DNA from: Mytilus trossulus
Lineage: Eukaryota
DNA length: 64,000 bases
Direction: 5' to 3'
Assembly (NCBI RefSeq): GCF_036588685.1
Contig: NC_086382.1
Location: 52,576,001 to 52,640,000 of the forward strand
Both the position numbers and the translations under genes were made by a program. How positions within the stretch are numbered: the stretch's first letter is position 1; every line of letters starts with the position of its first letter. This document shows positions 4,816 to 30,658 of this stretch, piece after piece. The notes below the pieces were generated by a model. That model saw only the letters and a program-made list of their open reading frames with translations. It was not told the origin of the DNA and made no database searches.

Positions 4816-7800
4816 ATGATTTTGTGTTGGGTTCTCGTTTTTCTACAACAAATATGGATAACTACGGGATCAAAAGGAGAGTGAGTATTTTTATTTCTTT
4901 ACCAATCATCATCTCAAAATCTGGAATGAAGATTTTAATATTACTGAAACAACTTTAAAATTAAGAAATAATTCATGGGGGCTTGAATCTATCGTTATTT
5001 TACCACGGGTTGGCCCTTTATGACAAATATTTTACCCTGAGCGATAGCGAGGGGTAAGATATCGGCATAAAGGGACAACCCGTGGTAAAATCTAGATATA
5101 TTCAAGCCCCCATGAATTATTTCGATTCTAATAGGACAAATACGGCATTTTTGTAGATCGAAGCGCTCTAGGTGGAGGCCATTATTTGCCGTTCCCATAC
5201 ATTAACCCTCTTGCTGCCGACCGTTTTTCAAGGTTGCATTTCATATGCCGGAAAATACGACAGCTCAACGTCTGTGACGTAAAATGCCAAACAACGACGT
5301 CATTCGATATATGACGTCACGACATGATGACCACTACATTTGGGACCCATTGGAGAAAAACATAACCCTGTTTAATATTTGGTATTTTATTTGAAAGAGA
5401 TACAGCATTGATGAGAAGATTGCATAAATTTATCCATGGACATATGTGTCCCTCCGGCACTGCCGGTTTGGACATATGTGTCCCTCCGGCAGCAAGAGGG
5501 TTAACGCACTTTTAGATTGGCGTACTCAAAGCGTTTGTAACATTCTAACATGACGTCCTTCAAACGCTTTGAGTACACACCCGTGGTAAAATATGAATAT
5601 ATTGCATTGGCTGTTCCGATCGTACTCCCACGTCATATGTTTTTTTCATGAATGAAGTACACGACGTCATAGAATGATGACGTTATAATTTAAGCATTTT
5701 ACGGGAAAATACACGCTTTTGATACCGAATATCATCACAACAAGGAAACGTAAACAAACGATGCTAAAATGTGGTATAAGCCCATCTTTTATATACATAG
5801 AAGACATATAAGTAAGTTATCATTAAAATTCATCCAAATCTATCTAAATAAGTTTTGTGAATAGTTTGAGCATGTCACTTATTTTGTTTGCTCCGTTCTT
5901 TTACGCCAATTTAAAAGTGCGTTAATTTATGGGAACGGCAAATAATGGCCTCCACCTAGAGCGCTTCGATCTACAAAAAATGCCGTATTTGTCCTATTAG
6001 AATCGAAATAATTCATGGGGGCTTGAATATATCTAGATTTTACCACGGGTTGTCCCTTTATGCCGATATTTTACCCCTCGCTATCGCTCAGGGTAAAATA
6101 TTTGTCATAAAGGGCCAACCCGTGGTAAAATAACGATATATTCAAGCCCCCATGAATTATTTCTTAAATAATATGAAGTGAAGGAAATGTAAAATGCATG
6201 ACTTTGTAAAACCATTAATATGAATTAACTTTTTCTGTTTGATATACCATTACTTTTAAGTTATATTGTGATTTTAGGGTATTGCAAATGAATTTTCCAA
6301 GTATAACAGTAGCTGCACAAGAAAAGGGAAATTTAACAGCTGAGGTAAATACAATACTGCTAGCTTCAGGTAAAACAGTATATATAGTTAAACTTTATAT
6401 TGCTTCATAGATTCTTTCTGAATTTTTAGCCTGACGTCCTTCTTGTATTAGTTTCTAATAAAAAAATTATGCAGTAAGGTTTATTTATATTTAATTGTGT
6501 TTACGTATAAGTCTGTAAATAAAATCTTTGATTTTGTAATTTCAGTCCGGACTAAATGGAGATATCCACATCAATCCAGGAAATGGTACAGGGACTGTCT
6601 ATTTTGAAGGAATCGATTTATTAGAGATAGTGAAGGTATGTGCAGGGTCAAGTTGATGTGTTATCAGTTTTTTTTCTCTTTTTTATGTTTTTCTGTTGTT
6701 GTTTTTTTTTATATCTATATGAAAAACTTTATCACTCAAACATTGTTACAAAGTTTTCAAATAAAGCCTTAATTCTACATGATATCAAAAGTTTCATTCA
6801 GTTTGTGAGTAAATGTACTGTTTGTGCAGAACGTATCTAGTTCGAACTAAATATTTGTCAACGACTTCAAAATTTCTTCAACAATGAAATACCATTACTA
6901 TGAATTACTCATTCCCATTTACTATTTCAGATTGTGTACAGTCTACCGCCAATTTGGATAAACCATTCTCATGTAGGTTTTGTTGGAACGTATGAAGGCG
7001 GTAAAGAGGTCGATATACCGTTGAAAGTCAAGGTTGGCATTTTACTTCATGTTTTTGTTTCTAAAGTGAAAAGTAATGAAATAGCACAGTAAATAGAGTT
7101 ATGAATATTAAGTGTCATATATTTTTCTCCTCCCCCTACCCCGAAAAAAATTACCGCCATCTTCATATTCTTAGAATATATACTGTTTTAATACTAACTG
7201 TATTAAATTGCAATGATATCTTCTTTCAGGAACCATCAGGAGGAAAAATAAGATTTAGCCTTGTCGCTGGAGATTTCCCTCCCGGAATACATCTTGAATC
7301 AGATCGAAGTAGGATATATGGTATAGCACCAGACGTTGATGCTCAGTATAGCTTTACTATACGTGCTACTGGATCTCGGGGGATGTTTGAAGATGCAGTT
7401 TTTAAAATGGAAACTATCGGTGAGGACATGTTTTTTTTCCGGTTTGACAACCAAACATAAAGCATATCACAGCTAGATATTTTTAGTTTTACCATTATTA
7501 TTTTTTGTGGGAAATACATCACAACTTAATAGATTAAGGAAAAACATCATGATGCAGATTAAGCTTGTCGTCTACAAGGTTCCTGGCATAATTTTTTTTC
7601 GTTGTGACAATAAAAACATGAATAACTGGGCTAAATATTTTTAGCTTTTACTATTATCATTTTTCAAGGATTAAGGGAGATGTTGGATATACATCAAGAA
7701 GAAAGGAAACGAAAAACAAAAACAAAAACAAAAACACAGTGAAGATTGTTAGTAGTTGTGGTGGTCTTTTGAAATATATTTTTATTTATTTTCAATGTTT

Positions 7801-10274
7801 AAATTATTCTTTATATTTATTAGGAGAGGTTGAAATATTGTCTATGACAAAATACAAATGTCTCAACAATATTTCAAACTCTTCATATATAGCACGAGGT
7901 TGTGGTAGCTTTTGGATAAAATATTAATAATGTGTATGTTTGCATGCACCAGTTATCTTTATTTAATATATATATTGCTTTTTACAGAGTTGCAGCATTG
8001 TCAATATGAACCTTGTCATAATGGTGCTGTATGTAACGAGACAAATGTCGGTAAAGGATACGAATGCGTGTGTGCCGATTTCTACGGAGGGAAAGATTGC
8101 AGTACAGGTACACTGTACATCACATTCCGTTTACCTTCAATAATATAAAAGTTTTGACATATTTGTCTATCAAACAATGACAAAATCAACCCTCTTAATT
8201 TCATAAATACCCTGTACTCATAACTTGATACCTGTTGTAGCCTTAATATATCCTTATCTATAGAGGTTAGTAGATGTTAGAAGATTTGGTATTAGTGCCA
8301 ATGAGACAACTCTCCATCCAAGAACAATTTTTAAAAAGTAAACCATTGTAGGTCAAAGTACGGCCTTCAACACAGAGCCTTCAAACAAAGTTGTCTCATC
8401 CCGAACAGGAAGCTACAAAGGGTCCCAAAAATCTCTATGTATGTAGTAGAGAATATGATTTTTTTTCTACATCATACTTCTATAAACGTTTTCAAAAATA
8501 GACAAAAACTATCAATTCTACAAATTCAAATAAATTATAAAAGCATTAAGACAATCAAATTAACACATTTGTTCCTGTTGGGTTCATTTCAGATTGTAGA
8601 CAGAGTGAGGTAGGCGTTTCTCTTCCTTCAAAAATCCCAGATGCTCAACTGTCGGCATATCTTTCTCACGAAATGTCAAATGCTACTGAAGCTCGTCTTG
8701 ACAGTGAAGAAAAGGGTTGGTGTGGAGAAAATGCGAATTCCTGGCTTCAGGTCGATCTAGGTAAATATTTTGATCACTTTCATTATTTCAATTACTATTG
8801 TTCTTTTTCATTTTATGAAATATGTTTTGAAATCAATCTTAGAGCAAACAGCACACTTTTAGTTTTTACAAAAATGAAATATTTTGTTTTACTTTTTTCA
8901 GTTGTACATTTGTTTCTTTCATTGAACTTAATGACATTGTTAAGATTTCTTTTTCTGTAGTTTACGTTCAGGTTGCATTTCACCGAATAAAGAGAATACT
9001 ATTTAAATCATATTAACATGTGCAATAATATAAGTAAAGATAAGCATCAATTTAAAACGATGAAAATGATTCTGATTCTTGCATAAGAATTACAACTTAA
9101 TGAAAAATAGTGTCATATATGAAATAAAAAAAAAATATCCTCTTTTCAAAAGTTAAATTTAGAATATTATTACTATGTGAAAACATATATTTTATTTTCC
9201 AGGTAACCGTTCTAAGATAGCTGGTGTTACTATGTTCGGCTACAACACCCAGTATCTGACAGAATCCTTCCAATTATCGGTCAGCACGGACGGTCAACAT
9301 TTTCAATTTATTAAAAATGGGACCTCACCTATCGTAAGCATACATTTTCTTTCAGACTTATGATACTGGGGCTATTCTGTGTTGATTATAGGAATAAACG
9401 CCTTTTAAAAGGGATTTATTGGTGTATAAACTCGAACAATTCACTCACAAACAAATAAAAGTCTATGATGATATGTTAACGTTTACTTAATACACCAATA
9501 AATTCCTTTTAAAAGGCGTTTTATCCTTAGAATTCTAAGTTAGATATAGGGAGTATATTGTTCCACACTCATTACCTCTATCACACGTAAATTGAAGATT
9601 TATGTCATTGAATAGGCCTGGCGCATGACTATACTTGTTGGTTGACGCAAACATATGTACTCAATGAAATTTGCTCTCTGATAAAAAGTTAACTGCCAAA
9701 ACTCTTATTATAATAATTTACTTTCATCTAGAAAATATGTTTGTCAAATATTGTGGATTCTTAAATATTCGTGGTACTCCAATTTTCGTTCATTTTGTGT
9801 TTACCGGTGAACCACGAATTTAAATGTTCAATGAGGCACAAGTGTTCTATATGCTTGTTTGCAGAACTTAATAAAAACACAAAATCAGATATCTACGAAA
9901 ACACAAAGTTTCATCAATTAACGAAAATTGGTACACAGAAAAATAATAAATCCACTGAACTTCATGATAAGTCATGTGTACACATTTATGTTCAGACTGT
10001 TTAATTTGTACATAGTTTTACCATTAAGAGATTGGTAATATTCTTCTGAAAACATTTATATAATTAAGAGATTGGTAATATTCTTCTGAAAACATTTATA
10101 TAATTAAAAAGAACTTTTTTTCATTTTTTTCAGGTTTTCCCCGGTCGATCTGGAAGACTGTATTCTAGCTTACAGGATGTTACTACTGCCAGATTTATTA
10201 GATTTCACCCGTATTCATACAATGCTAAATATGTTCCATGTATGAAAGTTGAACTATACGGATGTGTTTTGTAA
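4816..10274 (+). CDS. Paralog 1: secreted protein, SP + cubilin-NTD-like beta-helix + He_PIG/cadherin-like Ig + EGF + F5/8 type C (357 aa, 9 exons)
   Basis: Manually spliced exons 4816-4880, 6278-6344, 6546-6635, 6931-7032, 7230-7419, 7988-8107, 8593-8760, 9203-9333, 10134-10274. All introns are GT-AG with compatible phases (2,0,0,0,1,1,1,0), giving a 1074-nt open frame. MILCWVLVFLQQIWITTG..; ..NGDIHINPGNGTGTVYF..; LPPIW..GDFPPGIHL..YSFTIRATG..; EGF CQYEPCHNGAVC..YECVC..GGKDC; F5/8C IPDAQLSA..ARLD..GWC..WLQVDLG..ARFIRFHP..CMKVELYGC. Exon sizes match the two paralogs. Confidence 0.9.
4961..6167. mobile_element. Foldback/MITE with ~265-bp terminal inverted repeats, flanked by TTAA, in intron 1 of paralog 1
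   Basis: 4961-5205 plus 5505-5524 is the near-perfect reverse complement of ~5903-6167. Each arm begins with its own ~160-bp imperfect palindrome (4965-5123; 6005-6163). Confidence 0.9.
5206..5500. mobile_element. piggyBac-type non-autonomous element nested in the foldback element
   Basis: TTAA|CCCTCTTGCTGCCG...CGGCAGCAAGAGGG|TTAA: 14-bp TIRs, CCC/GGG ends, TTAA duplication, and a duplicated subterminal GGACATATGTGTCCCTCCGGCA. Confidence 0.9.
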
Positions 10275-11520
10275 TTTTATCATTGCAATATAACTATATA
10301 AATCCACTGCGTATCATGTATTTACTTTTGTTTTATTTCAATTACTATAAACAAACTATTGACGGGATGTATAAGTACCCGGCAACGTCTAATTGTACTT
10401 TTGTCCATCTGATGAGTTAAGCCTATGACAACTGATTTTTATAGTGCATTCTTATGTTGTACTGTTATACCACTGTCCTATGTTAGGGGAGGGTTGGGAT
10501 CCCGCTAACATGTTTAACCCCGCCACATTATTTATGGATGTGCCTGTCAAAAGTCAGGAGCCTGTAATTCAGTGGTTGTCGTTTGTTTATGTGTGACATA
10601 TTTGTACTTCGTTCATTCTTTTATATGAATGGGACCGTTAGTTTTCTCGTTTGAATTGTTTTACATTGTCATATCAGGACCTTTTATAGCTGACTATGCG
10701 GTATGGGCTTTCCTCGTTGTTGAAGGCCGAGCGGTGGGTGAACTATAGTTGTCAATGTTTGTGTCATTTTGGTCTCCTGTGGTCAGTTGTCTCAATGGCA
10801 ATCATACCACATCTTCTTTTTTATATACCAAGAATACATCTAGAAAATACAATTCATTTTTTTGAAAATATCTCTGTAAAAGATTTCGATTGAGGCAAAT
10901 AAATATCTTATCGAATGTCTTAGAATCTCGCTACAATAGAAATATTTATTAATCTTCAACACCAAACGATAACGGATTACTTCAACCAATTTTGCAACAA
11001 CACCGACTTGCATGTGAAAAACAGAATTAATGAAATATCGAAAACAAAAACAGACCCTTTGGCATTAAAAACATGAGTGAAACGGGGTTTTTTTTGTAAA
11101 AGTTTGTGTCATTACTTACAAGTAAGCTGTGCGAGTTGTATAAATCCGGACGGATTCAAGACGTGAACAGTTTGTGTTATCTCTGAATGCATAGGTGACC
11201 TGGGTTGAGTTCAATATCGTATCAGCTACGTAGTGCTATGCATATTTTGACTATTGAGCGTGTAGCTATAGACTAGTTGTTACATATATATTGATAGCGA
11301 TATTGAACTCAACCCTGCTGGCGACACGTACGCACCTATCCCTACTTTTTTCTACTGGCAGTCAAATTTTCCCGAATCTATGCTGATTGACCAATAACAT
11401 GGCGAATTTGTAATTTGTTTTTGTCATGAATCTGCTTGAAAATTTGCAACAGGACGTTAAGCAAATCAGTAAATAACAAAACTACATAACCTACTGACAT
11501 GACTTTTTGTCTTCTTTGTT

Positions 11521-11770
11521 TTTGACAAAAGAGATTAGTTCAGCTTCCAAACTTTCCATTTCTATGTATCAAATATTCCAGCTACACTTGCATATGTAGT
11601 ACAAGTATATATCTCCCAATTAATACGATATGCCAGAGCGTAAATGTCCCATCAATACTATCTTGATGGAGGAGTGTTGCTTAGGGGTAAGCTTTCGACC
11701 AAAGAGTTCTAATATAAGTTGTGAAGCTGAAATTAACTGTTAAAATTTACGGAAGGCGTCACTAGTTACA
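11521..11770 (+). mobile_element. Penelope-like element RT C-terminal remnant
   Basis: Frameshifted translation FDKRD*FSF..NFPFLC..NIPATLAY..VYISQLIRYARA matches the remembered YDKRDDF..NFPFL.SNIP...AYGVYISQLIRYARAC motif. A similar, more decayed copy lies on the minus strand at ~2300-2570. Confidence 0.6.
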
Positions 11771-12725
11771 GATGACGACGGATATTTTGTAACTATCCCG
11801 TCCTGTTTTCATCAAATGTGACCTGCCAAATAAGATTTATTATCGTATTTTTTACTAGATAAGCAACATGACGAAGGTCAAATAAGAAGCAGAATATAAC
11901 TACTATTCCGAAGTACCTGCTAAAACCCCGGGTGTTTTTAGGGTTTGTGTTGTTCAGTCTTTGGTTTGCATTGTGTTTTTTGTGTACTCCCTGTTTTTGT
12001 CGATTTTCGTTGTTTACAATTTCTGAGTTTTAATGCCATTTTGGTTTGGAATTATCGCCTCTTTTTTAAAGACCTAAATATTAATGAGATATCTGCTACT
12101 CGATTTTGATCAAATAACACAATACTACATTGTATGCATTTTTGAAAAAAAAACAAGGAAAAAACTCTTTTAGAATCATCATGGTATAGATAAGCGTTTA
12201 CAATTAATGATGTTCCTACGGATATTTTTTATCCCTGTGTTCGTATGGAATGGTTTTTTTTACATATTTTATCTCACGATGAAGAAGAAACATTGTCATG
12301 TCACAAATTAAGAATGAATTTGGTGCAAATAGATAAAAGTACGACCTACAACACGGAGCCATGGCTCACAACAAACAGCAAGCTATAAAGGGCCCCAAAA
12401 TGACTAGTGTAAGACAATTCAAACAGAAAATCCAATGGTCGAATCTATATAAAAAAAAAGAAAAATGAAAAAGCCTTATGAATCACATCAACAAACAACC
12501 ACAGGTTTCTGACTCAGAACCGGTGTAAACAAAAACAGCTGATTTTAACATTTTCACAAACGCCAACATTCACTCTAGTGATTGTAGTGTAGCATTGCAA
12601 CATAAAAAAGACACACAAATTGTTTTCAGTTTTAAGATAAACACTGGTTTGAAAAATTAACAAAATCAAAGACATGATAACTAAATGTTAATGATTCATT
12701 TATTAAACAAATTCAACATAAACTG

Positions 12726-15700
12726 TTAATTGACAATTTCACATCCATACACTTCCACTCGCATTCCTGGTTTGGTTTGATATGTTCTTGGTATGAACCG
12801 GATATATCTGGCCGTAACCGGCTGAAGAAATGCATGTTTTATTACACTGTTCACACTGCTACTGCCAGTAAATTCCTGTAAAAAGGAAAATGCAAGTAAA
12901 TTGTCAAATAATACAAAACAATTATTTAACTGGTAGATTCTGTATTCTTGTATTATGAATATATTTATTTAAAAAAAATGGATAGTCTTGTATACAACTT
13001 TCAAAATTTACCCCGAAAACCATAGTCAGGTGGTGATTGAAGGGGTATTGTAAAATCCTGACTATTGAAAAACAAATAAAAGAAAAAAGAAAAAAAAAGT
13101 ATTTAACTGGTGTACGCTCGGATAGTCATTTAGAAAGAACCTATTATATTACGGAGTAGTATTAATAACAACAGTATTATATTTACAAATTGTTTATTAT
13201 GTATATAATTAGAATCAATCACTTAGGGAAAGAACGAACACCTTTAAAATTAAACAAAAACCTCAGCAAAAATACAACATGAAAGTGTATTGTAGTTAAC
13301 AATTATTTTTTTTCTTCAAATCGCTAAAACTATCAGGTCGACTTCACATGCATTAACATATAAAGAAATGTATGTGTGTTATGGGTAATAACAGAAGCAC
13401 TATGTTTACCATTGCAGATGTTCCATTGACAACATTGGTAAAGGTATTTCCATCAACACTGTACTGTACCCTGAAGGTCTTGATGTAGCTTGACGATGAC
13501 TGACCTTGGGTTGCTACTCCATAAACAGATGTAGGATGACCTATGTCAACCTGTAATTTTAAAGTTTTGTTTTATTGGCAAGTTTTATGTAGAAATAACT
13601 GAGCACTAAAATGAAATGAATATGAAGAAACTTTCATTTTCGAGAATCTGCTATTTTCTACATGTACGATCATTAAAATATTTGATGAATAAGTTATACT
13701 AGCCTGTAACCAAGAGCCTGTATTGGTACCAGACCAGCCACGTGGGTTGTTTAGTCTTCCATCAGAAGCAGGGTGATCTCCTGAAGCGTAATGGGAAGAC
13801 AGCTGAGCATCTGGTATGGTCTTAACGCCGTTATCTACACCGACAGCTTTACTTCTACAATCTGTACAAAAAATATTGATGTCAATTTTTTGGTTTTTGC
13901 TGGGAAATTTGATTAACAGATAATAACTTTTAAAGAAATTTAGTATAAACCCTATTTGTAAAAAGAAAAATCACAAAAATACTGAACTTGCAGGAAAATC
14001 AATTCGGAAAGTCCATAATAACATGGCAAAATCGAATAACAAAACACATAAAAAACGAATGGATAAGAACTGTCATATTCCTGACTTGGTACAGGCATTT
14101 TCAAATGTAGAAAATGGCGGGTTAAACCTGGTTTTATAGCGCTAACCATCTACTTTTAAGTTTTAATATAATTAGATGTGCGATTAATAAAACAAGGATC
14201 CTGATCATACACTTGGAAGTTTTCAAAGTTGATATCCTTATGACCACTAATATATATAAATATTAAAATAAAACGTACCAAACTGACATGATGATCCACC
14301 ATAAGGATTTGTACAGTTACACTTATAATCATCTATAGCATCTTCACATTTTCCATTGTACTGACAGGGATTACTATTGCACTGGTTCTTCTCTGAAAAT
14401 ATAACAAGATTCGGTATTCTTACTAGCATCATACAGAATTGAGTTTAACACTTGTAGAATCCCATTTAGCGCATATTATTTTATTTGCAATTCATGAGAC
14501 TCTAAATACGTTCATAAGAGTAGTTTCCTCTAACAGCCTTTTCATAACATCATCAAACAGTTGCCAGTCGTAAAAAAAATTACATATTAATCAGTATGCG
14601 TAATCAAGTAAACCAACAACAAGTGATACACTAAAAAGGGTCTTTAAACAACATGCTCTTTGTCAATTTTTTTTTATCAAAATATAGCGGAAACAAAAAT
14701 GACGAATTGCATAATATGAACTTAAAGAAATGTTATGTTTAAAATATTCTTCTAAAATCTTATCAGTAAACAGAACTATGACACCATTTTGCAAATTCTG
14801 TATGGAAAATCGAGTTAAAAAAGCCAAATACTATTATAACGTAGGACAATCAAAAATATTCTACACGGAAGGGACAAAATTTTACATGTTCCCGCGTATG
14901 ATCAAAACAGTATACCCCTTGTGTCGATTGAAAAGATCTGATCAGCATATTTGCCATGAGCGTCAGTAACACGAATGCCAAACTCGTACGTTGCATCTAC
15001 ATCCGGTGCATTTCCAGTTAATCGACCTGTAGTCTTGTCAAGGTGTACACCTGGAGGGAAAGCTCCAGATACTTTCTCAAATCTCATTTTGCCACCTTCG
15101 GGATCCTGTAAAGATATTGAATCGATAAACATAGTAATACGGCGACCAAATAATATATGATAACTTGAATTCGAACATTGAAATTAAAATATTTAAAATT
15201 TTGAGGTAATTAAAAAAATTCAGTACTACATTTTAAAATGTAAATAAAAATTGTGAATGGAAATGGGGAATGTGTCAAAGAGACAACAACAAAGACTGTT
15301 ACCCTGTTTATCAGTTCTTTTGATCCCTTCGTAAACGAATATATTTCCAATCTTTATTATGATATTTACGTTTCTGTTCAAGTTTTATAACTGAATACAA
15401 GTAATAATTAATAATAATATATAAAAAAAATCTTTATCCAGAATCCACTTTTATAAATGTTACAATTGTTCATTCGGAGAACTAAGTGCCCAATGCTTAC
15501 AATTGCTTCTAACAATAAGTTGACTGACTGTCCTCCGGCAAACACTCCAAGACTGCCATGTGCTGAGTTAACCTTCCATGTCGGTGGTAAACTGTTAACT
15601 ATCTACAAAGAATATATATAGTAAGTTTTTTAACTATTCTTATGAGAGCGTTGTAATATTTTTCAAAATGTGTATGTCATTGTTACAAATATCATTTTAA

Positions 15701-17515
15701 CATGACTAGAAATGACGTTGTTGTCCATTCGTTGGACCAAAATGTATGTTGTTAAATTCACAGAACACTCAAAATGAGGTCTACAATCAATGTGTTGTGG
15801 CCTTACCCTCATTTGACTTTAAAACGTTTAAATAACCCACGGCTAAGCTTTTGTCTAAGCTAGGTTCACATAATAAACGAAGCAATAAGACTTCTAGGCC
15901 AAAGGAACCATACTTCCCGTTTTTAACTTTCGTCGGAGTTCAGTATTTTCGTGAATTTACTTTTTGCACAAACATCTTTTTTTATAAAAGTGTAAATAAG
16001 TTATGATTCATGATTCGCCGACATGATATAATATATGGCTTGTTATAACAAATTGTTAGGTGTTGGTTTGATCAATTCGGTCCACTTTTCTGTAATAAAA
16101 ATTAAAATGTGCTTCTTTTTTGGAAGAATTGAAAAAGAAAAAAAGAACATGTATGAGGGTCCGACCAGATAATGTGCAGCATATGCTTTTCTGTTATAGT
16201 TTCTCAAATAACTATACCTCAAATAATTTAAGCATATCTGTATGTCCAATGTAAACAGTGCCATTTCCATTTGGCTTCATAAAGATGTTGCCTTGCTGAG
16301 GTCCTGCCTTCAAAATTAGAAAAGACTATAGTGCAAATGTACGTGAATGATATGTCATAACAATAGCATATTTGTAATCGCTCTTTGGTCATTACTCTAT
16401 GTCTTTTCCAAATGAAACATTAACAGAATAGCCTAGTCGGACAGTTCGTCGTCTTAATCTTATTACATTTTTTTTGGTATTAATGTATGCTAAAAATTCC
16501 CTTAGCCATCAATGATTTCCCTTTTAATATGACAATATGAAAAAAACTATCAAATTTTACTCAGACATGTTAGGCATCTTTTAGACAATAGTAGGTAAGC
16601 AGTTACTTAAATTGTATTGAATATGTTTAATACTTTGTAACGTTATTACCTGTATTGTAAGATTGCCTCCCTTTTCTGCTGTAATGTACACATTAGGATA
16701 TTGTATGTCAAAGAAACTGAAAATAAAAAGGATAAACAGAAAGTTATACTCAATTTTTGAAGATTAAACTAATGAAATGAACGTTATAACAAAAACAAAT
16801 AAACATATACAAAAAATGAAAATGTATAATACAGTGCAAGGTATGAATGAATAAACATTAAATAAAAAAAATTACGAAAAAAGAGACACAAAGGATACCA
16901 AATGGATATTCGACCTCATAATAGGAAAACAAAGGATATGGATTATTTATCCATGATATAAAATCAGTACATGCTCAACAAAAAAAACCACAAAAGTCGA
17001 AAAATAGAATTCCAACGCAATTGCAAAAAAACAAACAAAAGTAAAAAAAAAAAACACGCACAAACTAACAACAGTACATAGTACACGAAACACAACACAG
17101 CGAACCAAAAGAATGAGCAAGATGAACCCCAGTTAAAACGTGAGGCAATCTTAAATGTTCCAAAAGGGTAACCACTGTTGAGAGAGATTTGACAATAAAA
17201 AAGTCAAATAAAAAAAAAAACGTACACACTAATCCATTTTGTGCGCTCTACAAAACCGGTCTCTATAAATTGTTTTATTCACATTCACTAAAGACAAATA
17301 TGAGAAATCTATAATCAAATTAAAACAAATTATTTAATTCAGATTTTTTAAATTTAAAATTGTCGATTTACCATCAATGAATATATAAAAGCATCTGTAT
17401 GTTATGTATGCCTTGTTAATATTTTTATAAAATATTGTTATATTATAAAAAGTTCTTACCTCGCATAAATTGTCAAGAAGCATGAAGATAATATCAAAAC
17501 GCTGGTGGTAGCCAT
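12726..17515 (-). CDS. Paralog 2: same architecture (355 aa, 9 exons; intron 7 predicted GC-AG)
   Basis: Minus-strand exons 17515-17460, 16716-16650, 16307-16218, 15602-15501, 15105-14916, 14392-14279, 13861-13704, 13550-13410, 12875-12726; 1068-nt open frame. MATTSVLILSSCFLTIYA.., YPNVYITAEKGGNLTIQAGPQQGNIFMKPNGNGTVYIG, LPPTWKVNSAHGSLGVFAGGQSV..AIDPEG..SGAFPPGVHLDKTTGRLTG..YEFGIRVTDAHGKYADQIFSI, EGF CNSNPCQYNGKC, F5/8C WLQVDIG..GVATQG..ARYIRFIP..MRVEVYGC. AATAAA on the minus strand at 12704-12699. Confidence 0.9.
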
Positions 17516-20800: not shown

Positions 20801-21276
20801 ATTAATGGAGAAGCTTTATCGTGGTGGTCAGATTTTTATTAATGGAGAAGCTTTATCGTGGTGGTCAGTTTTTTTATTAATGGAGAAGCTTTATCGTGGT
20901 GGTCAGGTTTTTTTATTAATGGAGAAGCTTTATTGTGGTGGTTAGTTTTTTTTCTTATTAATGGAGAAGCTTTATCGTGGTGGTCAGTTTTTTTATTGAT
21001 GGAGAAGCTTTATCGTGGTGGTCAGGTTTTTTATTAATGGAGAAGCTTTATCGTGGTGGTCAGTTTCTTATTAATGGAGAAGCTTTATCGTGGTGGTCAG
21101 TTTTTTTTATTAATGAAGAAGCTTTATCGTGGTGGTCAGGTTTTTTTATTAATGGAGAAGCTTTATTGTGGTGGTCAGTTTTTTTATTAATGGAGAAGCT
21201 TTATCGTGGTGGTCAGTTTTTTTATTAATGGAGAAGCTTTATTGTGGTGGTCATTTGTTTTTATTAATGGAGAAGC
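17842..21276 (+). repeat. Tandem satellite, ~36-42 bp unit (AGCTTTATCGTGGTGGTCAG-Tn-ATTAATGGAGA), roughly 90 copies
   Basis: Directly visible. Unit length varies through the poly-T tract, and most monomers carry a HindIII site (AAGCTT). Copy number is estimated as length/38. Confidence 0.97.
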
Positions 21277-21414
21277 CAGAGAGAACAACCGACCCCAAAC
21301 TGGGAATCCTAACCCTGATGCAACTGCCACTTACTGAATTCGTCATAAACAGTGCAAACATCGAGCTGATCTCATTCCATAAAATGAAGTAATTAAGAAA
21401 CGTCGAGTGAACTT

Positions 21415-21841: not shown

Positions 21842-22884
21842 ACAGTGATCGAAATGACAACAACACACAAACAAAACATAAGTACAAATGTATATGCCTC
21901 AAATCATGCTATTTAATGTTTGACTGAGTCACTAGTATTGTAAATATTCAAACCATTATTGCATTCATCATTCGCTTATGCAGAATCTTTGCAAATCGAC
22001 AGTCAACTTTTTTGTTGGCTTGTTTAAACATATATATATATATATATGTTTTGAAGACCGTCATACCATTATGTAAATCCGGTTAAAAGAGATGAGGGTT
22101 TCTCTCCAAACCACATATAGAGTTGGTTTATTTATAAATATATATTTATTATTTTTCTTGAGGGGGGGGGGTGGGTGGGGGGGGGGAATTTGATTGGCAA
22201 AGGTTTATAATGATATGCAACTGCATATTGCAAACATTGAAAATTCTTGACAAACACATGCAAATCCTTATCTGATCATTACTCTCTCACTCTATCTATC
22301 CAATTAGCAAACTGTTTAAAGACTCGCTACTTTTTATATGAAAGGGAAAATCAAAACTTCTACAAATAAGTCTTACAGAATAAGTTTTTAAATCTTTAAT
22401 TTCTTGTTTCTCAAAAAAAAATCTGTTAACCTGAAATTTTTTAAATCTTGACAACATAAAAATGATTTTGGTCATTGTACACAATGGCAAGGTATATTAG
22501 GAAAAACAGAGAAGAAAGCAAGGTCATTCAGATGTTTTTGCACCTTACAGAAATATACTGCTACTTCCTAGTTCATTAATCCAAAGTTCATATCCACCTA
22601 GAAACTAAGGTTTTTCAACTTGTTTATAACCTCAACTTCAAAGCAACTAAAACAAACACATGTGACATTTATCATCGTCAAAACTTAATAAATGGATTAA
22701 AATTCATATTATCTCAGAAACATAATTATGAATATATCTCTGTCTAAGTTTTAGGTCGTCAGTCCGTAACTGCGTACTTATGTTTTCTTAAACAAGGTAG
22801 AAAAGGCCGGCACCTAACATTAACAGACAGCTGAAGTTCCGCCTTCCAAAAATTACGCTCATCTAACGAAGAATTGATTCAAAG

Positions 22885-25800
22885 ATGGCTGCCAAGATGG
22901 CGCTTGTTGTTCTGTTTGGATTTTCTCTTGTTTCCATTATTTCATCACAAACTAATTTTGAGTAAGTAACTAATTATATTTAACGTTGAAGCCAGTCATC
23001 TGGATTGCATTGTTTGCCCCATTTAAAAATACGGCTCATTTTACAATCAATCTTCCGCAAAGTAAAAATACCCCCGTTCGTTGACAGATTGTGTTGCTCA
23101 GCCTTAAGTTTTATATGTTGTGTTTTGTATACTGGTCTGTAAATTAGTCAGAAAAAAATCATTTCGACTAACCGTCAAGTTAACTTTATTGTAATATTTT
23201 TTGTGAAATATTATATTCTAATTTCGTTCTCTATGGTATTGCAATAATCGAGTCCTCTATTTACGTCAATGGTATAACGATTTTTGCGCTTCAATGAACA
23301 TGTGTATTACATCCGAAAGTGTCTTTGTTTCTGTTTTATGAACAGGATATATATATATATATATATATAGAAATAATAAAAGATGTGGTATGATTGCCAA
23401 TAAGACTACTATCTACTCCCCACATGAGACCATAATGTCATAAAAAAATAACAACCAAAAGGGGACTTCAACAATGAGTAACATTCAAACCATATACTCT
23501 TCTTTAAAAGGAAAAATATAAGCACAAAGATGTATATTTTTCAATTCAAACGAGAAAACTATATATTTTTCTAGATGTATTAAGTGGCAATTGCCCTTTG
23601 CCTTTATATGCAATATACGGAACAATAATTTTATACTTTTCAGTCCAATGCTAGTGACTCCACCTCATGTTTTAGTCCATGCCGCTACTTCTGGTGATTT
23701 TACTATGAAGGTACATGTTTGTGTTATATTTCATTTGTACATGCAATGTATTCTATGTCTGAAAACTGGCGAAGTTGGACTTTTTGCTTATAACTTGATA
23801 ACTTGTAATAAGGCTATGAACGTTTAAATTTAATATCGATTTTGCCAAAGAGACAACACCATCGACGACACAAAATGTTCAAAAGACATGTACAGATAAA
23901 AAGAACGTCTAAATGGACCATTATGTAGACAATCACAATGTATGTGTTAAAGTTTATATGTAGTAAGATCTCTAGGCCCCTTTCCTCTTTTATATTGATT
24001 AGTGAAATAACAAAGCTTAAGGAAAAGTTGTACATAAACTTAGTACAAATAATGCACATACAATAACGGTATAATAATACATAAGTACAAACAAAACAAT
24101 AATGGTCATGTCTAGCATATATATTATATACACTACGTCTTGTTTGATGATACGGGAATGAGAAAAATACGTTCAAGATTACAGACTATTTACTTTAAAA
24201 CTGCATCTGTATATACTCATATAGCCATTAAGTTATTTTATTAATTGTAGAGTAATAATGGAGATATAAAGATTGGATACAATGAAACCGGCAAAGTCAT
24301 CTTTGATAATGAAGACTTAAATTATATAATACAGGTATATCATTAGATTGCCATATTTGTATCGTCAATGCAGTGCATTTTATTTTTTGTTTTGAGAAAT
24401 TAAAGAAATATACGAAAGCCTTTTAGAGCCATGTTAATTTACTTTTTGATATTATTAGCACAGTTTTGCTCTACGAGGGTATTACAACATTAAATGCAAT
24501 TGAACAATGTTATAACACATACAAAATTTGTCAATTTGGAACGAATGCGCTGCTGTGTTTTATGAGAAACAGGAAGAAAAAACAAATAAACAAATCTTGA
24601 AAAAATCGATTTTCATTTCATTTCATTTTAGCTGATTCTTAGTCAACCTCCCGTATGGGAAGAACATTCTCCGTTTGGATATATTGGAGAATTTCACGCA
24701 GGGGACAAAATAGATGTAAACGTCATAGCTAAGGTATACATTATGTGAATAGTATGTATAATAACTCTTATTTTCAATCATATATTATAGGATCACTGGA
24801 GGCTGCATGTTTGAAAGGCAAATACATTTTGGGTCATTATATGCAATCAAAATCATAACTTAAACAGAGTTTGAACGCATTCTAGGGAATATACTTGTAT
24901 GGAGGGTGCAATACAAATGTTTAGCAATTGACTCCGATTTGTTAAAATCAATTGCAGTGAGACGATTAACATCAATTGAAAAAAAAAATCTTTTCCTCTG
25001 AAAATACATGACAGAATCATTGTTTTTAAACTTAATGGCATTATTATCTGTTCGACTCAAAATTTATAAAATCGTACAGGCACATGAGTGGTTATCATGG
25101 TGTCTAGACAAAACTGCATTGAAAAAAAAAAGCAAATCTTAATTTAGCAATCGTAATTTCAGGATTGTATCATATAAATGTAATTATTTGAAATGACCGT
25201 TTGAACAATTTTAGATTTTTTCAAAATGTGCTTCGATCCAAGCTTTTACACTTCAATACACTTACATAAGGAACCATTAAATCTCAAGTACAAAACTATG
25301 CAACTAAGAAGCGAATTCAAATATATTAATTTGTCTTTGTAAATTCGATATATAGATGCTAGTCTAGTTAAAATTATGTCGTCACAGGACCCGGAAGGAC
25401 AACCAATAGTGTATGGTATTGTAGCCGGAATGTTGCCACCTGGAGTAAAACTAGAACCTGATTCCGGTCGAATACATGGACTAATTCCCGATTCTGATGC
25501 CACTTACACGATAACTATTAGAGCTACAGATATACATGGTCATTTTGCTGATAGTGTATTCAAAATTGTTACCCGTGGTAAGCATATTTCACTAATGGAA
25601 ATATAGAGGAATTATTAAATTTTTCTGTGCATTTTTGTTCTGAACTACTTAATTTTTTTCAAAGACATGCTTTTCAAAATATGCTTAATTATTAAAAACG
25701 GACTTATCGAACATTGATTCCAAATAAGTACATTAAATAACAAATCAAAATCAATCATGCCTTATCATCATTTATTCTTTCTTACTTAGGAATAATATAT

Positions 25801-28800
25801 TGCACAAAGAAACCTTGTGTTAATCAAGGCGTTTGTCTAGATGAAACTACAGGATACAAGTGTTACTGTCCAAATCCATATGGTGGTCTTAGATGTGAAA
25901 TTGGTACGTATCAAAATAACCTTAATAATAGGCCAAAAATCTCTCATTCTTTCAAATAAAAAAAAACACAATTAAATTTAATAAGAGACTCTCAACAAAC
26001 TGAATCGACAACCTGTTATTTACTATTGAAACAAAAGACACATTCATAAATTAGTGACAAATCATCATTAAAGGGCAATAGCTCCGTAATTATATCAAGT
26101 GGTGTCGGTCATATAGACAATTTTGAAGAGCTTCTATTGCTCCAACTTTTCATTTTACAGTTTCTATCTATAAAAGGGAGAAGGTTTGGTACCGTTTAAA
26201 CGTTTAATCCCGCTGCAAATGTTTGCACCTGTCATAAGTCAGGAATCTGATTTACAGTAGTTGTCGTTTGTTTATGTAATTTATACGTGTTTCTCGTTTT
26301 TTTATATAGATTAGACCGTTGGTTTTCCCGGTTGTTTTACACTAGTAATTTTGGGGCCTTTATAGCTTGTTGTTCGGTGTGAGCTAATGCTCCGTGCTGA
26401 AGGCCGTAAATTGACCTATAATGGTTTACTTTTTTAAATTGTTATTTGGATGGAGAGTTGTCTGATTGGCACTCACACCACATCTTTCAAAACAGTTTCC
26501 AAGATAATATTCCAAAGACATGAAAAATTTTCTATTCAAAACATGCCATTTATAGGCAATAACTCATATAAGGAGTGATCCGATCTAGGAAAGGAGGTAG
26601 GTCATGCATTCTGACCATTTTCGCCCTGTTATAATTTCTCCAAAAGGTTGGGTTTTTTTAATTAGACAATTTCAATTGATTTAGCCTTCTGGTTTATTTT
26701 AGTCATGGCACCCTTGTTTGTTTGATGGCAGGAACAAAAACTTATTTTAAATATCATAAAACTCATGCAGTTAAAATTAAGTTAAAATTGGCTAAGGTCA
26801 CGTTACAGTAAATAACTGTCACAGATTTTGATAAAGCTTTAGCTCGTGGAACTATAATTTAAAAACGAAAATAGAATACGTCTATCTCTTGTATTATCTT
26901 AAACATCAAAATAGCGTCATATCAACTGTAAAAAAGCACATAAAACCTACAAAACATGTTCCTAAATTTATGTAAAAATCATGAAATACATTACGATAGG
27001 ATCACCAATTTCGAGTTCGTGGTTACGCTATACATAATTAAAAGTGGTGTTCTGTGTGAAAAGTGTACCACAAAACATCGCAAAAAGTGTCACGCTACAT
27101 AAAAACGTCGTTGTGTGGTTTTTTTCACTACCAAATAGGTAACAGATTGGTTAAATGACCAAAAGGAAGTAGGAAATTATTATTCCTTGGCCTAAGTGGT
27201 TTCAGAAGAGATAAGTTTTTTTAAACGTTTACGACGACTACAGAGGACGGACGGACTTTAAGTAATTGCAATAGCTCAACAAGACCCAGATGAACTTTAA
27301 AGCAAACAATAGCTCGCAAAGAGCCATGAACTTAAAAACAAGGGAAAAAAAGCAAATCAGCAAATATAAGCTCTCAATTTTAAATAATAAATTTCAAATA
27401 TAGTCAATATAGCTTAATTAATATACAATTTATCATTTTAACAAATTGTCTCCATATAAGACTGTAGCAGTAACAATCTTATTGGACCATCAAATGCCAA
27501 AGCTATACCTGATGCCAGTTTAACAGGATATAATATGTACAGTTCAAATGTGGCGAAGGATGCAAGATGGAATGCAGGTGGATGGTACGGGGAGGATTCA
27601 ACATCTTATTTACAAGTAGATTTAGGTTGGTTAAATAAATATTAAGAAACAATTGCTATGCATTTTATGTTGGTACCACCACGAATCTAAAATTGACTCT
27701 TTATCATTTAAAGATACAATTTCTAGTCATTTATTGCGTATACTTTTTTCGCAAGGTACACTAGACAATTGTTCTATTGAGTAAAGCCATTTGACTTTTA
27801 GGCCATTTTGTGATCTATCATTACTTGCTATCTTTGTCATTTGAATGTGGTGGATCATTGCCAATGAGACAACTCTACTACCCAAGAGACCAAATGACAC
27901 AGAAATTAACAACTAAAGGTCAGAGTACAGATGACAACAACAGAACCACAGACTCCTGAATTGGGACATACGTTCGACTCTTGTGAAGAGTTGTCTCATT
28001 GGCAATACGCCACATCTTTGTTTTATACAAACATACATACACACATACAGAGTAGGCTGGGGTTATACATGTAAGTGGAATTCCAAACCACCTCTAACTT
28101 GGGACAGTAATAGCACTAGATAAGAACGACCTATAAAAATCAGGTGATGAAGGCTTAACTCATCAGATGAATACAAATAGAAAAAAAAAATCTTAAAAAA
28201 ACAGGGTTTACGCGGCCGGGTACTTGTACATCCCAACAACAGAAATAAATTAAGTACAGATCTGATGGTACTCACATTTACTGACAGAAGTTTCAAAACT
28301 AAACACAACTTATTTAAAAAGCATGTTTCTAAAATCTGAATCACAATATTGATAAAAGGTGCACTAGCTACGAGATATATAAATGATCTTTGAAATTCTA
28401 CTGTTAATGCCAAATTAGAGTTTTAATCCAATTTTCCACATGGCAAAAAAACTAAAGATCAGAGTACAGATGACAAGGACACATTCTTGTTTTTTTGTTC
28501 AATCATTAATGAAAGTGAAATAGCCAGTATGGTTTAATTTTGCCAAACTAAGCTAATAAATGTAGATGATGAATGATTCACTAGCACAATTATTATTTTT
28601 TCGCCTATATTGCATATGTTTGTTTTTGTGTGGAAATATACTGTTGATATAAGTATATATATATATTTAAATGAAGTTAGCGAAAATGTTTGTATTTCCT
28701 TATCTCACACCTTGTTCTGAAAACATCGACATTCATTTGATAAAAAAAAATAACTATACTTTAGTGCTGGGAGTACATACCAAAAAGAGTTCGGTGTTTT

Positions 28801-30658
28801 CCTGAATATCCCACTTTGTGAAATTACAGGTAAAAAATAATTTTGGGGGACAATTGGGAAGTTTGAATGTGGGACAATTGGAAAATGTAATGCCCCATTT
28901 ATGAGCATAATGTTTTCTGGTCTGTCCCGTCTAACGTTTGTTCGTCCGTCTGTCCCGTTTCAGGTTAAAGTTTTTGTTCGATGTAATTTTTGATGAAGTT
29001 GGAGTCCAATCAACTTGAAACTTGGTTCACATGTTCCCTATAATATGATCTTTCTAATTCTACTGCCAAATTTGAGATTTCCCCCCATTTTCACGATATA
29101 CTGAACATGAAAAAGGATAGTGCGGATGAGGCATCCGTGTACTGGGGACACAATCTTGTGTTGGTGGCGATTAATTTGTTTTATAGTGTGTTGTAGTTAT
29201 TTAAAGGTTACTAATCAATGTAACTTATCAAATATGGAGAAAAAAAACATGAACATATCTTATTTTGCACATAGTAGGTAAAACTGAAGTATCATCAAAC
29301 ATGGAAATTAATATGAAGTTATAACATTTTAGTCTTAGATAGATATTTGTTTTCATTTAGTTTTTATTGGCTTTGAACGAGCTGTTAGTAACTGCGGATA
29401 TACAGTAGACTATGACAACAAGTATATTTCAGAATTAATTTGTTTATGAGTTGCTACATTGTACATGTAAGAGGTCAAACACTTATGACCATGTGTACAT
29501 ATTTCAAATATAGATTTCAATTTGCTAATGCAATTCACCATAGGCAAAAATCAGAATACTCAGCTATCAACGGCTACTATTGTATCTTTATTTTAGAATA
29601 CAATAATTTTACTTTTAGGAAATGTATCTCATATAGACAATTTTCAAATCAAAGCTCGAAGTTCCAGCCCTTCAGCATATAATACTGGGAGTTTCTACAT
29701 ACAACATAGCATTGATGGAAACATATTCCATAATTACACATCAAGTTCCAACGGAAATGTATTTGTAAGTGATTAATTTAAGGTGTAAGGGTTTTTCATT
29801 CAGTAACACGAATACACGTTAAACGTATTCTTCCAGAGCACCTGATATCATCTCAAGTTTTTGGTGGGGTTCTCGATGCTCGGTCTATAGTTTTATATAT
29901 GTGTTTTGTATACTATTGTTTGTCTGGTTGTTTTGGTGTTTTTTAGAAATGGCGTTGTTATATTATTTTCGCCTTGTGAGTGTGAATGTCACTCTTGTAT
30001 CTTAAGCTTCTCTTCAAACTAAGAAGGCAGGCATCAGTCTCCCCTCGGCGTTATAAATGAGCAAAGGTCAAAACTACATGCATTTTCTTAGTAAGCTCAT
30101 AAAGTAGTGTAACAAATCCAGATTACTGGAAAAGAGAGTTTATATGATCGGCTGTTCTCATTAGGATCCTCATTTAGTCTATATCTGGATTTTATTTTTT
30201 GAGGCAAGAACGTTCTTATGAACGTCAATACGGAAAATCGTTTAACGAATTAACTTCAGAAACTGATATTTTCGTTTACATAGGTATCATGTTACGGATG
30301 TATTGTAATTAAACTGTGATTCGTAAATGATAAATATGCATAATGGTAATATAAATCTTGAATAGGAACAAAAGTAGATGTCAAAACTATAAAGCTTTAT
30401 GCAAATACTTTTTTATTGCATTTAGCTGATATGATCATAAAGTCATCCATACCATTCGTATTTTTTGTATAGAATTAGACAATTAATTCTGCATGTATTT
30501 TGCAGACTTTCTCTGGTACCACGTCTAGCAGTGCTCACAAAGTCAATCTACCCGAACCGTTAGATACCAGATTCATCAGATTCTTCACCCTGACGTGGCA
30601 TCACAGTTACAAACCGTACATGAATATGGAAATTCATGGCTGTCACAATAACTCATAA
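22885..30658 (+). CDS. Paralog 3: same architecture (365 aa, 9 exons)
   Basis: Exons 22885-22961, 23644-23710, 24251-24334, 24632-24733, 25388-25577, 25790-25903, 27461-27625, 29619-29764, 30506-30658; all GT-AG; 1098-nt open frame. MAAKMALVVLFGFSLVSIISS.., NNGDIKIGYNETGKVIFDNEDL, QPPVW..DPEGQPIVYGIVAGMLPPGVKL..TITIRATDIHG, EGF CTKKPCVNQGVC, F5/8C IPDASLTG..YLQVDLG..TRFIRF..MNMEIHGC. AATAAA at 30669-30674. Confidence 0.9.
28888..29160 (+). mobile_element. Probable Helentron-associated (DINE/HINE-like) non-autonomous element
   Basis: ATGCCCCATTTATG start, a GTCC/GTCT-type microsatellite near the 5' end, and a short hairpin followed by CACA.TCTTGT at the 3' end. The class assignment is by general structure only. 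Confidence 0.45.

What the first reader, a model, noticed from the sequence alone, without database searches (positions are those of the whole stretch)
4816..30658. Three-gene cluster encoding an unusual secreted mosaic protein: beta-helix + prokaryote/phage-type Ig + EGF + discoidin
Seen: three intact 9-exon paralogs with shared exon sizes (67, 84-90, 102, 190, 114-120 nt) but strong divergence (31/63 identities between paralogs 1 and 2 in the best-conserved exon), so this is an old, maintained family. Known: EGF+F5/8C is a standard animal module (lactadherin/EDIL3-like) that binds lipid, glycan or collagen. I do not know of a described animal family in which it is preceded by a cubilin-NTD-like segment and a He_PIG domain. 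Inference: a trimeric, tail-fibre-like soluble lectin or adhesin presenting three discoidin heads, perhaps for immune recognition, mucus/particle capture or shell/byssus matrix. The ORF track hides this because every exon is short.
Basis: partly seen in the sequence, partly recalled or inferred. Interest (0 to 1): 0.9.

Follow-up and report, generated by a model that had tools for sequence, protein, structure and literature searches.

The report
Secreted discoidin-headed protein gene cluster
An invertebrate (probably bivalve) genome carries a tandem cluster of five old, intact nine-exon genes, three of them in this window, for small secreted proteins with a short, probably trimer-forming N-terminal strand module, a bacterial-style Ig domain, one EGF and one discoidin domain; this looks like a new variant of multivalent binding protein, but neither expression nor function has been shown.

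Summary
Hand-built models give three intact nine-exon genes: g1 4816-10274 (+), g2 17515-12726 (-) and g3 22885-30658 (+). The shared exon sizes are 67, 84-90, 102, 190 and 114-120 nt.

- **Cluster size:** there are five genes, not three. Two more intact paralogs lie just left of the window. These five are the only copies of the He_PIG exon and of the two N-terminal exons found in the 1.3-Gb genome.
- **Gene structure:** 39 of 40 introns are GT-AG. One intron in g2 has a GC donor.
- **Domains:** Pfam supports He_PIG, EGF and F5/8C exon by exon. All five genes have a signal-peptide exon and no membrane anchor.
- **N-terminal module:** the 52 residues match no Pfam, PHROG or PDB sequence. Three copies of the 30-residue exon B were predicted to assemble (score 0.61, best control 0.01). 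This supports trimerisation but does not show it. The cubilin likeness remains a lead from memory.
- **Not available:** no RNA run was listed, so splicing and expression are unverified. The joined protein could not be searched, so how widespread the architecture is remains open.

Verdict: real genes and a new variant of secreted discoidin protein, of moderate interest. The scan's other notes on these features lie on this same window, not on other DNA.

The parts
4816..4880 (+). g1 exon 1: ATG and signal peptide, ends in phase 2
   Evidence: Best ATG/hydrophobic/GT candidate, donor GTGAGT; frame check
6278..6344 (+). g1 exon 2 (A, 67 nt): first part of N-terminal strand module
6546..6635 (+). 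g1 exon 3 (B, 90 nt): second part of N-terminal strand module
6931..7032 (+). g1 exon 4 (C, 102 nt): presumed first strands of the Ig-like domain
   Evidence: no Pfam hit alone
7230..7419 (+). g1 exon 5 (D, 190 nt): He_PIG Ig-like domain core
   Evidence: Pfam He_PIG 21.7 bits
7988..8107 (+). g1 exon 6 (E, 120 nt): EGF, six Cys
   Evidence: Pfam EGF 18.4 bits; Cys count
8593..8760 (+). g1 exon 7 (F, 168 nt): discoidin part 1
   Evidence: Pfam F5_F8_type_C positions 9-43; cross-assembly pieces
9203..9333 (+). g1 exon 8 (G, 131 nt): discoidin part 2
   Evidence: Pfam F5_F8_type_C positions 43-82
10134..10274 (+). g1 exon 9 (I): discoidin end and stop codon
17460..17515 (-). g2 exon 1: ATG and signal peptide
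   Evidence: similar to exon 1 of paralog 0a
16650..16716 (-). g2 exon 2 (A, 67 nt)
16218..16307 (-). g2 exon 3 (B, 90 nt): the piece folded as three copies
   Evidence: conserved in other assemblies
15501..15602 (-). g2 exon 4 (C, 102 nt)
14916..15105 (-). g2 exon 5 (D, 190 nt): He_PIG core
   Evidence: Pfam He_PIG 37.3 bits; model pLDDT 88.7
14279..14392 (-). g2 exon 6 (E, 114 nt): EGF
   Evidence: Pfam EGF 29.4 bits
13704..13861 (-). g2 exon 7 (F, 158 nt): discoidin part 1; its donor is GC
   Evidence: same intron position with a GT donor in paralog 0a
13410..13550 (-). g2 exon 8 (G, 141 nt): discoidin part 2
   Evidence: Pfam F5_F8_type_C 39.0 bits
12726..12875 (-). g2 exon 9 (I): discoidin end and stop; AATAAA 22 nt after the stop
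   Evidence: Pfam 22.3 bits
22885..22961 (+). g3 exon 1: ATG and signal peptide
   Evidence: donor GTAAGT
23644..23710 (+). g3 exon 2 (A, 67 nt)
24251..24334 (+). g3 exon 3 (B, 84 nt)
24632..24733 (+). g3 exon 4 (C, 102 nt)
25388..25577 (+). g3 exon 5 (D, 190 nt): He_PIG core
   Evidence: Pfam He_PIG 27.0 bits
25790..25903 (+). g3 exon 6 (E, 114 nt): EGF
   Evidence: Pfam EGF 26.7 bits
27461..27625 (+). g3 exon 7 (F, 165 nt): discoidin part 1
29619..29764 (+). g3 exon 8 (G, 146 nt): discoidin part 2
   Evidence: Pfam 14.9 bits
30506..30658 (+). g3 exon 9 (I): discoidin end and stop; AATAAA 11 nt after the stop
   Evidence: Pfam 19.8 bits

Best explanation
This is a tandem cluster of five old paralogous genes. 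Three lie in the window. Two more lie at C10:52563137-52569523 (-) and C10:52569896-52575238 (+).

Each gene encodes a secreted protein of about 350-365 aa. After the signal peptide the mature chain has:
- a 52-residue module of four short strands separated by Gly/Asn turns (exons A and B);
- an Ig/cadherin-like domain of the He_PIG type (exons C and D);
- one EGF domain;
- one C-terminal discoidin (F5/8C) domain closed by its usual Cys pair.

[quoted passage not shown] The Ig and EGF domains act as a stalk. Three discoidin heads then bind a glycan, lipid or matrix ligand with avidity, as collectins, ficolins and C1q-domain proteins do with other heads. The paralogs differ most in exon length in the three discoidin exons, where the ligand loops lie. 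This suggests diversified specificities.

My confidence by step: real coding genes about 0.9; secreted and unanchored about 0.8; homo-oligomer through the N-terminus about 0.5; lectin-like or adhesive recognition role about 0.4.
For: **Gene models**
- Conserved nine-exon structure and phases in five paralogs; 39/40 introns GT-AG; no internal stops.
- Coding-type substitution pattern, and similarity between loci limited to exons.
- Exon borders are marked by cross-assembly conservation.

**Domains**
- He_PIG reaches up to 46.2 bits, EGF up to 40.8 bits, and F5_F8_type_C pieces together cover profile positions 9-127.
- Each gene has six EGF cysteines and the terminal discoidin Cys pair.
- The exon D model has pLDDT 88.7 and its nearest solved folds are Ig/cadherin-like.

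**Secretion**
- Every gene has a signal-peptide exon.
- The stop codon follows the discoidin domain directly, and a poly(A) signal follows soon after in g2 and g3.

**Oligomer**
- Three copies of g2 exon B gave score 0.61, against 0.01 for the best of 3 controls.
- The mark was reached by 21 of 30 proteins solved as pairs of one chain and by 0 of 23 solved as single chains.
- The runs agree in at least 88% of contacts, and partner pLDDT is at least 78.
- On eukaryotes the mark was reached by 17 of 29 (animals 7 of 16), but by only 1 of the 7 with no older solved relative.
- The job used three copies, unlike the calibration, which used two.
- The confident contacts join strand 1 of one chain to strand 2 of the next, in a cyclic pattern.

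**Family restricted to this cluster:**
Against: - No RNA run was listed, so no splice junction, expression level or tissue is known.
- g2 needs a GC donor, or else an alternative junction that removes a conserved discoidin strand.
- The trimer test used a 30-residue fragment without its neighbouring exon. A pass of this kind may come from the model's memory of a solved look-alike, and it says nothing of affinity.
- The N-terminal module matches nothing by sequence.
- Exon C could not be tied to He_PIG by profile comparison.
- No ligand can be read from the discoidin sequence.
Confidence: 0.55

Rival explanations
1. These are monomeric matrix or bridging proteins of the lactadherin/EDIL3 kind. 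The EGF and discoidin domains do the work, and the N-terminal 52 residues are only a beta-rich linker or cap with no role in assembly.
For: EGF followed by discoidin is the core of MFGE8/EDIL3 (established knowledge). The N-terminal module has no sequence match to any oligomerisation domain.
Against: Exons A and B are conserved in size and motif in all five paralogs and in other assemblies. The exon B fragment was predicted to self-assemble well above controls. There is only one EGF and one discoidin domain, and no RGD was seen in the EGF exons.
Confidence: 0.22
2. These are 'mini-cubilins'. The trimeric N-terminal beta-structure has an open end that docks on the beta-helix of amnionless or a similar membrane protein. 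The proteins would then be tethered cell-surface receptors, not free lectins.
For: In cubam, three cubilin N-termini form an intertwined beta-helix that docks end-to-end on amnionless, and uncapped beta-helix ends tend to need a partner (PMC6283879). The genome has an amnionless gene on C3 and a cubilin-like gene on C2. From memory, the strand and turn spacing of exons A-B resembles cubilin residues 42-82; this is a lead only.
Against: No cubilin chain was found in the PDB with exon profiles or single exons. There is no coiled coil after the strands. Amnionless is unlinked to the cluster. The N-terminal exons of this genome's own cubilin-like gene were not found for comparison.
Confidence: 0.1
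3. The models are not functional genes. They would be unexpressed relics, or exons that belong to other transcripts.
For: There is no RNA evidence. g2 has one non-GT donor.
Against: Five copies at 36-52% identity all keep open frames, phases, cysteines and signal peptides. They show a coding substitution pattern. Orthologous exon pieces are conserved at 75-98% in other assemblies.
Confidence: 0.05
4. A side hypothesis that does not exclude the others: the He_PIG domain entered this lineage by transfer from a bacterium or phage and was later split by an intron.
For: - The best-scoring relatives of exon D are giant repeat proteins; the named ones are archaeal and bacterial, at 35-40% identity per repeat.
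- The language-model look-alikes are phage and bacterial He_PIG clusters.
- The Pfam model finds no He_PIG exon elsewhere in this 1.3-Gb genome.
Against: - Ranking by summed score favours many-repeat proteins, so single-domain animal relatives could not appear in the list.
- Solved cadherin and dystroglycan-complex folds match about as well as bacterial ones.
- The genome search works exon by exon and gives lower bounds.
- No tree was built.
Confidence: 0.15

Closest known systems
Lactadherin (MFGE8) and EDIL3/Del-1
   Same: Secreted animal proteins in which EGF is followed directly by a discoidin (F5/8C) domain at the C-terminus.
   Different: Those have two or three EGFs (one with RGD) and two tandem discoidin domains, and no N-terminal strand module or He_PIG domain. 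Here there is one EGF and one discoidin domain, and no RGD was seen.
Cubilin N-terminal region (cubam, PMC6283879)
   Same: The strand module sits at the very N-terminus of the mature chain, upstream of EGF. It has short strands with Gly/Asn turns at a spacing of 10-11 residues. It is predicted to self-assemble in three copies.
   Different: There is no coiled coil and no CUB domain. No detectable sequence match was found with exon-level searches. Homology is unproven.
Collectins, ficolins and bivalve C1q-domain proteins
   Same: They share the proposed logic: an N-terminal oligomerising part, a stalk, and C-terminal recognition heads. Like bivalve C1qDC genes (PMC6835236), these genes occur as tandem duplicates.
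   Different: The domains are unrelated: no collagen stalk, and no C-type lectin, fibrinogen or C1q head.
Prokaryotic and phage He_PIG / Big_9 Ig repeats; Rib and SraP cadherin-like modules
   Same: Exon D matches Pfam He_PIG at up to 46 bits and is 35-40% identical to repeats of archaeal and bacterial giants. The nearest solved folds include Rib and SraP.
   Different: Here it is a single copy, split by a phase-0 intron, inside an animal-type secreted protein. It is not a long repeat array on a cell surface.
Retinoschisin and Dictyostelium discoidins
   Same: Small secreted proteins that present discoidin domains as oligomers.
   Different: They oligomerise by different means (the disulfide-linked Rs1 domain; an H-type lectin domain trimer). 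They have no EGF or Ig domain.

Membership tests
Pfam He_PIG (PF05345) | Profile match above the gathering score (24 bits) | tested here: met
   On exon D alone: paralog 0a 46.2, g2 37.3 and g3 27.0 bits. 0b (23.5) and g1 (21.7) fall just under, on a partial domain.
Pfam He_PIG (PF05345) | Complete Ig-like domain of about 96 positions | tested here: inconclusive
   Exon D starts at profile position about 30. Exon C should supply positions 1-29, but it gives no Pfam hit and no profile match to a He_PIG repeat protein. The exon D model has five strands.
Pfam EGF (PF00008) | Six cysteines and a profile match above 21.5 bits | tested here: met
   Six Cys in every paralog. Scores are 18.4 (g1), 29.4 (g2), 26.7 (g3), 28.8 (0a) and 40.8 (0b) bits.
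Pfam F5_F8_type_C (PF00754), discoidin | Profile match over the whole domain, and the N- and C-terminal Cys pair | tested here: met
   The three exons cover profile positions 9-127. Single exons exceed the 28.2-bit cut-off in g2 (39.0) and 0a (35.1, 32.4). All five have a Cys at the start of exon F and at the end of exon I. The joined domain was not scored.
Lactadherin / EDIL3 family | Two tandem discoidin domains after two or three EGF repeats | tested here: not met
   One EGF exon and one discoidin domain per gene. The stop codon follows the discoidin domain.
Cubilin | N-terminal intertwined beta-helix homologous to cubilin residues 36-80 | tested here: inconclusive
   No PDB cubilin chain at E <= 10 with exon A or B profiles or single exons. 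The three-copy prediction passes. The resemblance is recalled from memory only.
Cubilin | Coiled coil, eight EGF and 27 CUB domains | tested here: not met
   Exon B is followed directly by the Ig-like exons. There is one EGF and no CUB exon in the genes.
Phage tail-fibre repeats | Profile or sequence match of exons A/B to a phage fibre family | tested here: not met
   No PHROG family at E <= 0.1. No viral locus was confirmed. Only weak look-alikes at 0.84-0.85, below the level of a lead worth trusting.
Animal lectin (functional class) | Shown carbohydrate binding | not testable with these tools
   Needs protein and glycan arrays.

The most novel reading that the evidence does not exclude
The 52-residue N-terminal module is a portable, cubilin-type intertwined beta-helix that trimerises a protein other than cubilin. 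Here it is fused to a He_PIG Ig domain of prokaryotic or phage ancestry and to an EGF-discoidin head. The result would be a new class of trimeric discoidin receptors that are either free or docked on amnionless.
Probability: 0.25. Interest if true: 0.7.

Novelty: new variant of a known kind. Interest (0 to 1): 0.45.

Why it matters
If the N-terminal module really trimerises, it would be a second use of the unusual intertwined beta-helix so far described only for cubilin. It would also give bivalves a further, structurally distinct family of multivalent recognition proteins beside the C1q-domain, FREP and C-type lectin families. The single He_PIG domain, confined to this cluster in a 1.3-Gb genome, is also a clean case for testing whether an Ig domain typical of bacteria and phages was taken up and split by introns in an animal. 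If none of this holds, the cluster is still a well-defined, previously hidden set of five secreted genes that standard ORF tracks miss.

Tried and rejected
- **RNA evidence:** The look-up of sequencing runs on 6250-16249 listed no run.
- **Full-length relatives:**
  - The search of protein representatives with exon D was swamped by giant many-repeat He_PIG proteins, so no single-domain relative could be seen.
  - The search for homologous proteins with exons F, B and D returned only unspliced genomic ORF pieces from other assemblies. One 151-aa hit carrying both He_PIG and EGF reads through a short intron and is not a transcript.
- **Joined protein:** Inside one script the exons were joined in memory only to count length, frame and stops, and the result was neither printed nor saved.
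- **Cubilin likeness:**
  - PDB searches with exon A and B profiles and with single exons found nothing.
  - A weak extra genomic hit on C8 also matched nothing.
  - I located this genome's cubilin-like gene but could not find its N-terminal exons within 21 kb upstream. One candidate proved to be a dispersed repeat.
- **Phage-fibre likeness:** no PHROG hit and no viral locus.
- **Exon C against a He_PIG repeat protein:** not significant.
- **PDB by sequence with the exon D profile:** nothing at E <= 0.01.
- **Literature** for He_PIG, discoidin/EGF in mussels, and FA58C lectins: no described family of this architecture.
Full report
**Setting**

The window is G000:C10:52576001-52640000 of a 1.3-Gb, 32% GC genome in 541 contigs. 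The gene structure and repeat content are those of an invertebrate, probably a bivalve.

**Checking the observation**

I translated all stop-to-stop pieces and compared them with each other. This gave three collinear series of similar pieces: one on + at 6.2-10.3 kb, one on - at 16.8-12.7 kb, and one on + at 23.6-30.7 kb. Reading the DNA at each piece gave AG acceptors and GT donors that keep one frame. A search for ATG, a hydrophobic stretch and a phase-2 GT donor upstream gave one clear signal-peptide exon per gene.

The resulting models are:

| Gene | Span | Strand |
|---|---|---|
| g1 | 4816-10274 | + |
| g2 | 17515-12726 | - |
| g3 | 22885-30658 | + |

Each has nine exons. A frame check gave CDS lengths of 1074, 1068 and 1098 nt, with an ATG start, a terminal stop and no internal stop. 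For that check the exons were joined only in memory inside the script; nothing joined was printed, saved or searched.

So are its start (4816), its end (30658) and its figure of 31/63 identities between g1 and g2 in the 190-nt exon.

**The cluster is larger than reported**

A six-frame search of the whole genome with the He_PIG exon found five copies, all within 36 kb on C10. I fetched the 20 kb left of the window. It holds two further complete nine-exon paralogs:
- 0a on -, at C10:52563137-52569523;
- 0b on +, at C10:52569896-52575238.

Both have the same exon sizes and phases and their own signal-peptide exons. 0a and 0b are divergent, with start codons about 370 bp apart. g1 and g2 are convergent.

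Profiles of exons A and B find only these five genes in the genome, plus one weak hit that led nowhere. The Pfam He_PIG model also finds only this cluster.

**Are they real coding genes?**

- All five keep open frames, six EGF cysteines and the discoidin Cys pair, at 36-52% mature identity.
- In the three length-invariant exons, paralogs differ at 0.43, 0.33 and 0.63 of codon positions 1, 2 and 3.
- DNA similarity between paralog loci is limited to exons.
- ORF pieces from other public assemblies match exon F (98% and 60-66%), exon B and exon D (75-88%). In the exon D alignment, similarity begins and ends exactly at the predicted splice sites.
- 39 of 40 introns are GT-AG. The exception is g2 intron 7, whose donor is GCTAGT. 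Its closest paralog 0a has an ordinary GT donor at the same position.
- An alternative phase-1 junction exists in g2, but it would delete the conserved discoidin strand that the next exon encodes in frame. I therefore favour the GC donor.
- In g1, g3 and 0b the same intron lies 10 nt further on, in phase 1.
- No RNA run was listed, so no junction is confirmed by transcripts.

**Domains**

Pfam was run on single exons, by reference.

| Domain | Exon(s) | Scores in bits (g1 / g2 / g3 / 0a / 0b) |
|---|---|---|
| He_PIG | D | 21.7 / 37.3 / 27.0 / 46.2 / 23.5 |
| EGF | E | 18.4 / 29.4 / 26.7 / 28.8 / 40.8 |
| F5_F8_type_C | F, G, I | pieces cover profile positions 9-127; up to 39 bits on one exon |

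- Exon D starts at He_PIG position about 30. Exon C (34 aa) should therefore supply the first strands, but this could not be shown by Pfam or by profile comparison.
- An AlphaFold2 model of exon D (10-row alignment) has pLDDT 88.7 with five strands.
- Its nearest solved folds are bacterial Rib and SraP modules, animal cadherins and a chain of the dystrophin-glycoprotein complex. All have E >= 3e-3 and TM-scores about 0.7. The fold is Ig/cadherin-like, but its origin cannot be read from structure.
- By summed score, the best relatives of exon D are giant repeat proteins. Those with names are archaeal or bacterial. The language-model look-alikes are phage and bacterial He_PIG clusters.
- That ranking favours many-repeat proteins, so it cannot exclude animal relatives.

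**The N-terminal 52 residues**

Exons A and B follow the signal peptide directly. They read as four short hydrophobic strands separated by Gly/Asn-rich turns at a spacing of 10-11 residues, ending in a short D-L-x-x-I stretch.

They match nothing by sequence:
- not in Pfam;
- not in PHROGs;
- not in viral contigs;
- not in the PDB, whether as profiles or single exons.

The Atlas look-alikes of exon B score only 0.84-0.85 with few shared features. They include clusters carrying bactofilin and T4 tail-fibre domains, which is a lead only.

[quoted passage not shown] From memory, human cubilin residues 42-82 have the same strand and turn spacing and several of the same residues. My recalled numbering agrees with the paper's Met44, Pro103 and Asn105. 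This is still a lead, not a test. Our proteins also lack the coiled coil.

- The score was 0.61, and the best of 3 controls scored 0.01.
- The mark was reached by 21 of 30 proteins solved as pairs of one chain and by 0 of 23 solved as single chains.
- The runs agree in at least 88% of contacts, and partner pLDDT is at least 78.
- On eukaryotes the mark was reached by 17 of 29 (animals 7 of 16), but by only 1 of the 7 with no older solved relative.
- The job held three copies, unlike the calibration, and the alignment was not used.
- The confident contacts pair residues 7-11 of one chain with residues 16-21 of the next, around a ring. That is the pattern expected of an intertwined three-chain beta-structure.

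The model supports self-assembly but does not show it. A pass may reflect likeness to a solved complex.

**Most likely function**

The proteins are secreted. They have no anchor, the stop codon follows the discoidin domain, and a poly(A) signal lies 11-22 nt later in g2 and g3. The discoidin domain is C-terminal. The exons whose lengths vary among paralogs are those that encode it (158-168, 131-147 and 135-153 nt), while exons A, C and D never vary in length.

I therefore favour a multivalent, probably trimeric binding protein with diversified discoidin heads. This would be analogous in logic to collectins or to the tandemly duplicated bivalve C1q-domain proteins (PMC6835236, seen).

The rivals are:
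- a monomeric lactadherin-like bridge;
- a cubilin-like receptor docked on amnionless (the genome has amnionless on C3 and a cubilin-like gene on C2);
- non-functional models.

**Novelty**

No paper found describes this architecture. However, the joined protein could not be searched, so automatic annotations or relatives in other animals may exist. I class it as a new variant of a known kind, of moderate interest. The most novel reading that remains open is a portable cubilin-type trimerisation module on a non-cubilin protein.

**Limits**

- No reads were laid.
- All searches were made exon by exon, by reference.

Noticed in passing
window 17842-21276: A 38-bp satellite of about 88 copies (90% matches) with strong GC skew. 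It fills most of the space between the divergent starts of g2 and g3.
   Followed up: partly
window 4961-5212 and 5915-6167: A foldback element inside g1 intron 1. Its inverted arms of about 250 nt are 95-99% complementary and about 700 nt apart. It accounts for the unusual length of that intron (1397 nt).
   Followed up: partly
L006+L007 (C10:52563137-52575238), left of the window: Two further intact nine-exon paralogs (0a on -, 0b on +). They are transcribed divergently from start codons about 370 bp apart, probably from a shared bidirectional promoter.
   Followed up: yes
window 13704/13550 (g2), 8760/9203 (g1), 27625/29619 (g3): The intron inside the discoidin domain sits in phase 0 in g2 and 0a, and 10 nt further on in phase 1 in g1, g3 and 0b. 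This is an apparent intron slide between subfamilies. In g2 the donor is GC.
   Followed up: partly
G000:C3:14715664-14719617 and G000:C2:51331626-51427584: The genome has an amnionless gene and a cubilin-like gene (EGF exons followed by an array of at least 30 CUB exon hits). The N-terminal exons of the latter were not found within 21 kb upstream.
   Followed up: partly
window 10429-10890 vs 42565-43438; 13927-14149 vs 55425-55644 and 32739-32951: Copies of dispersed repeats, 75-90% alike at the translated level, lie downstream of g1 and in a g2 intron. Further copies occur in the right half of the window.
   Followed up: no
window 44800-47100: A region of short tandem, protein-like repeats visible in several frames on both strands. 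It lies outside the finding.
   Followed up: no
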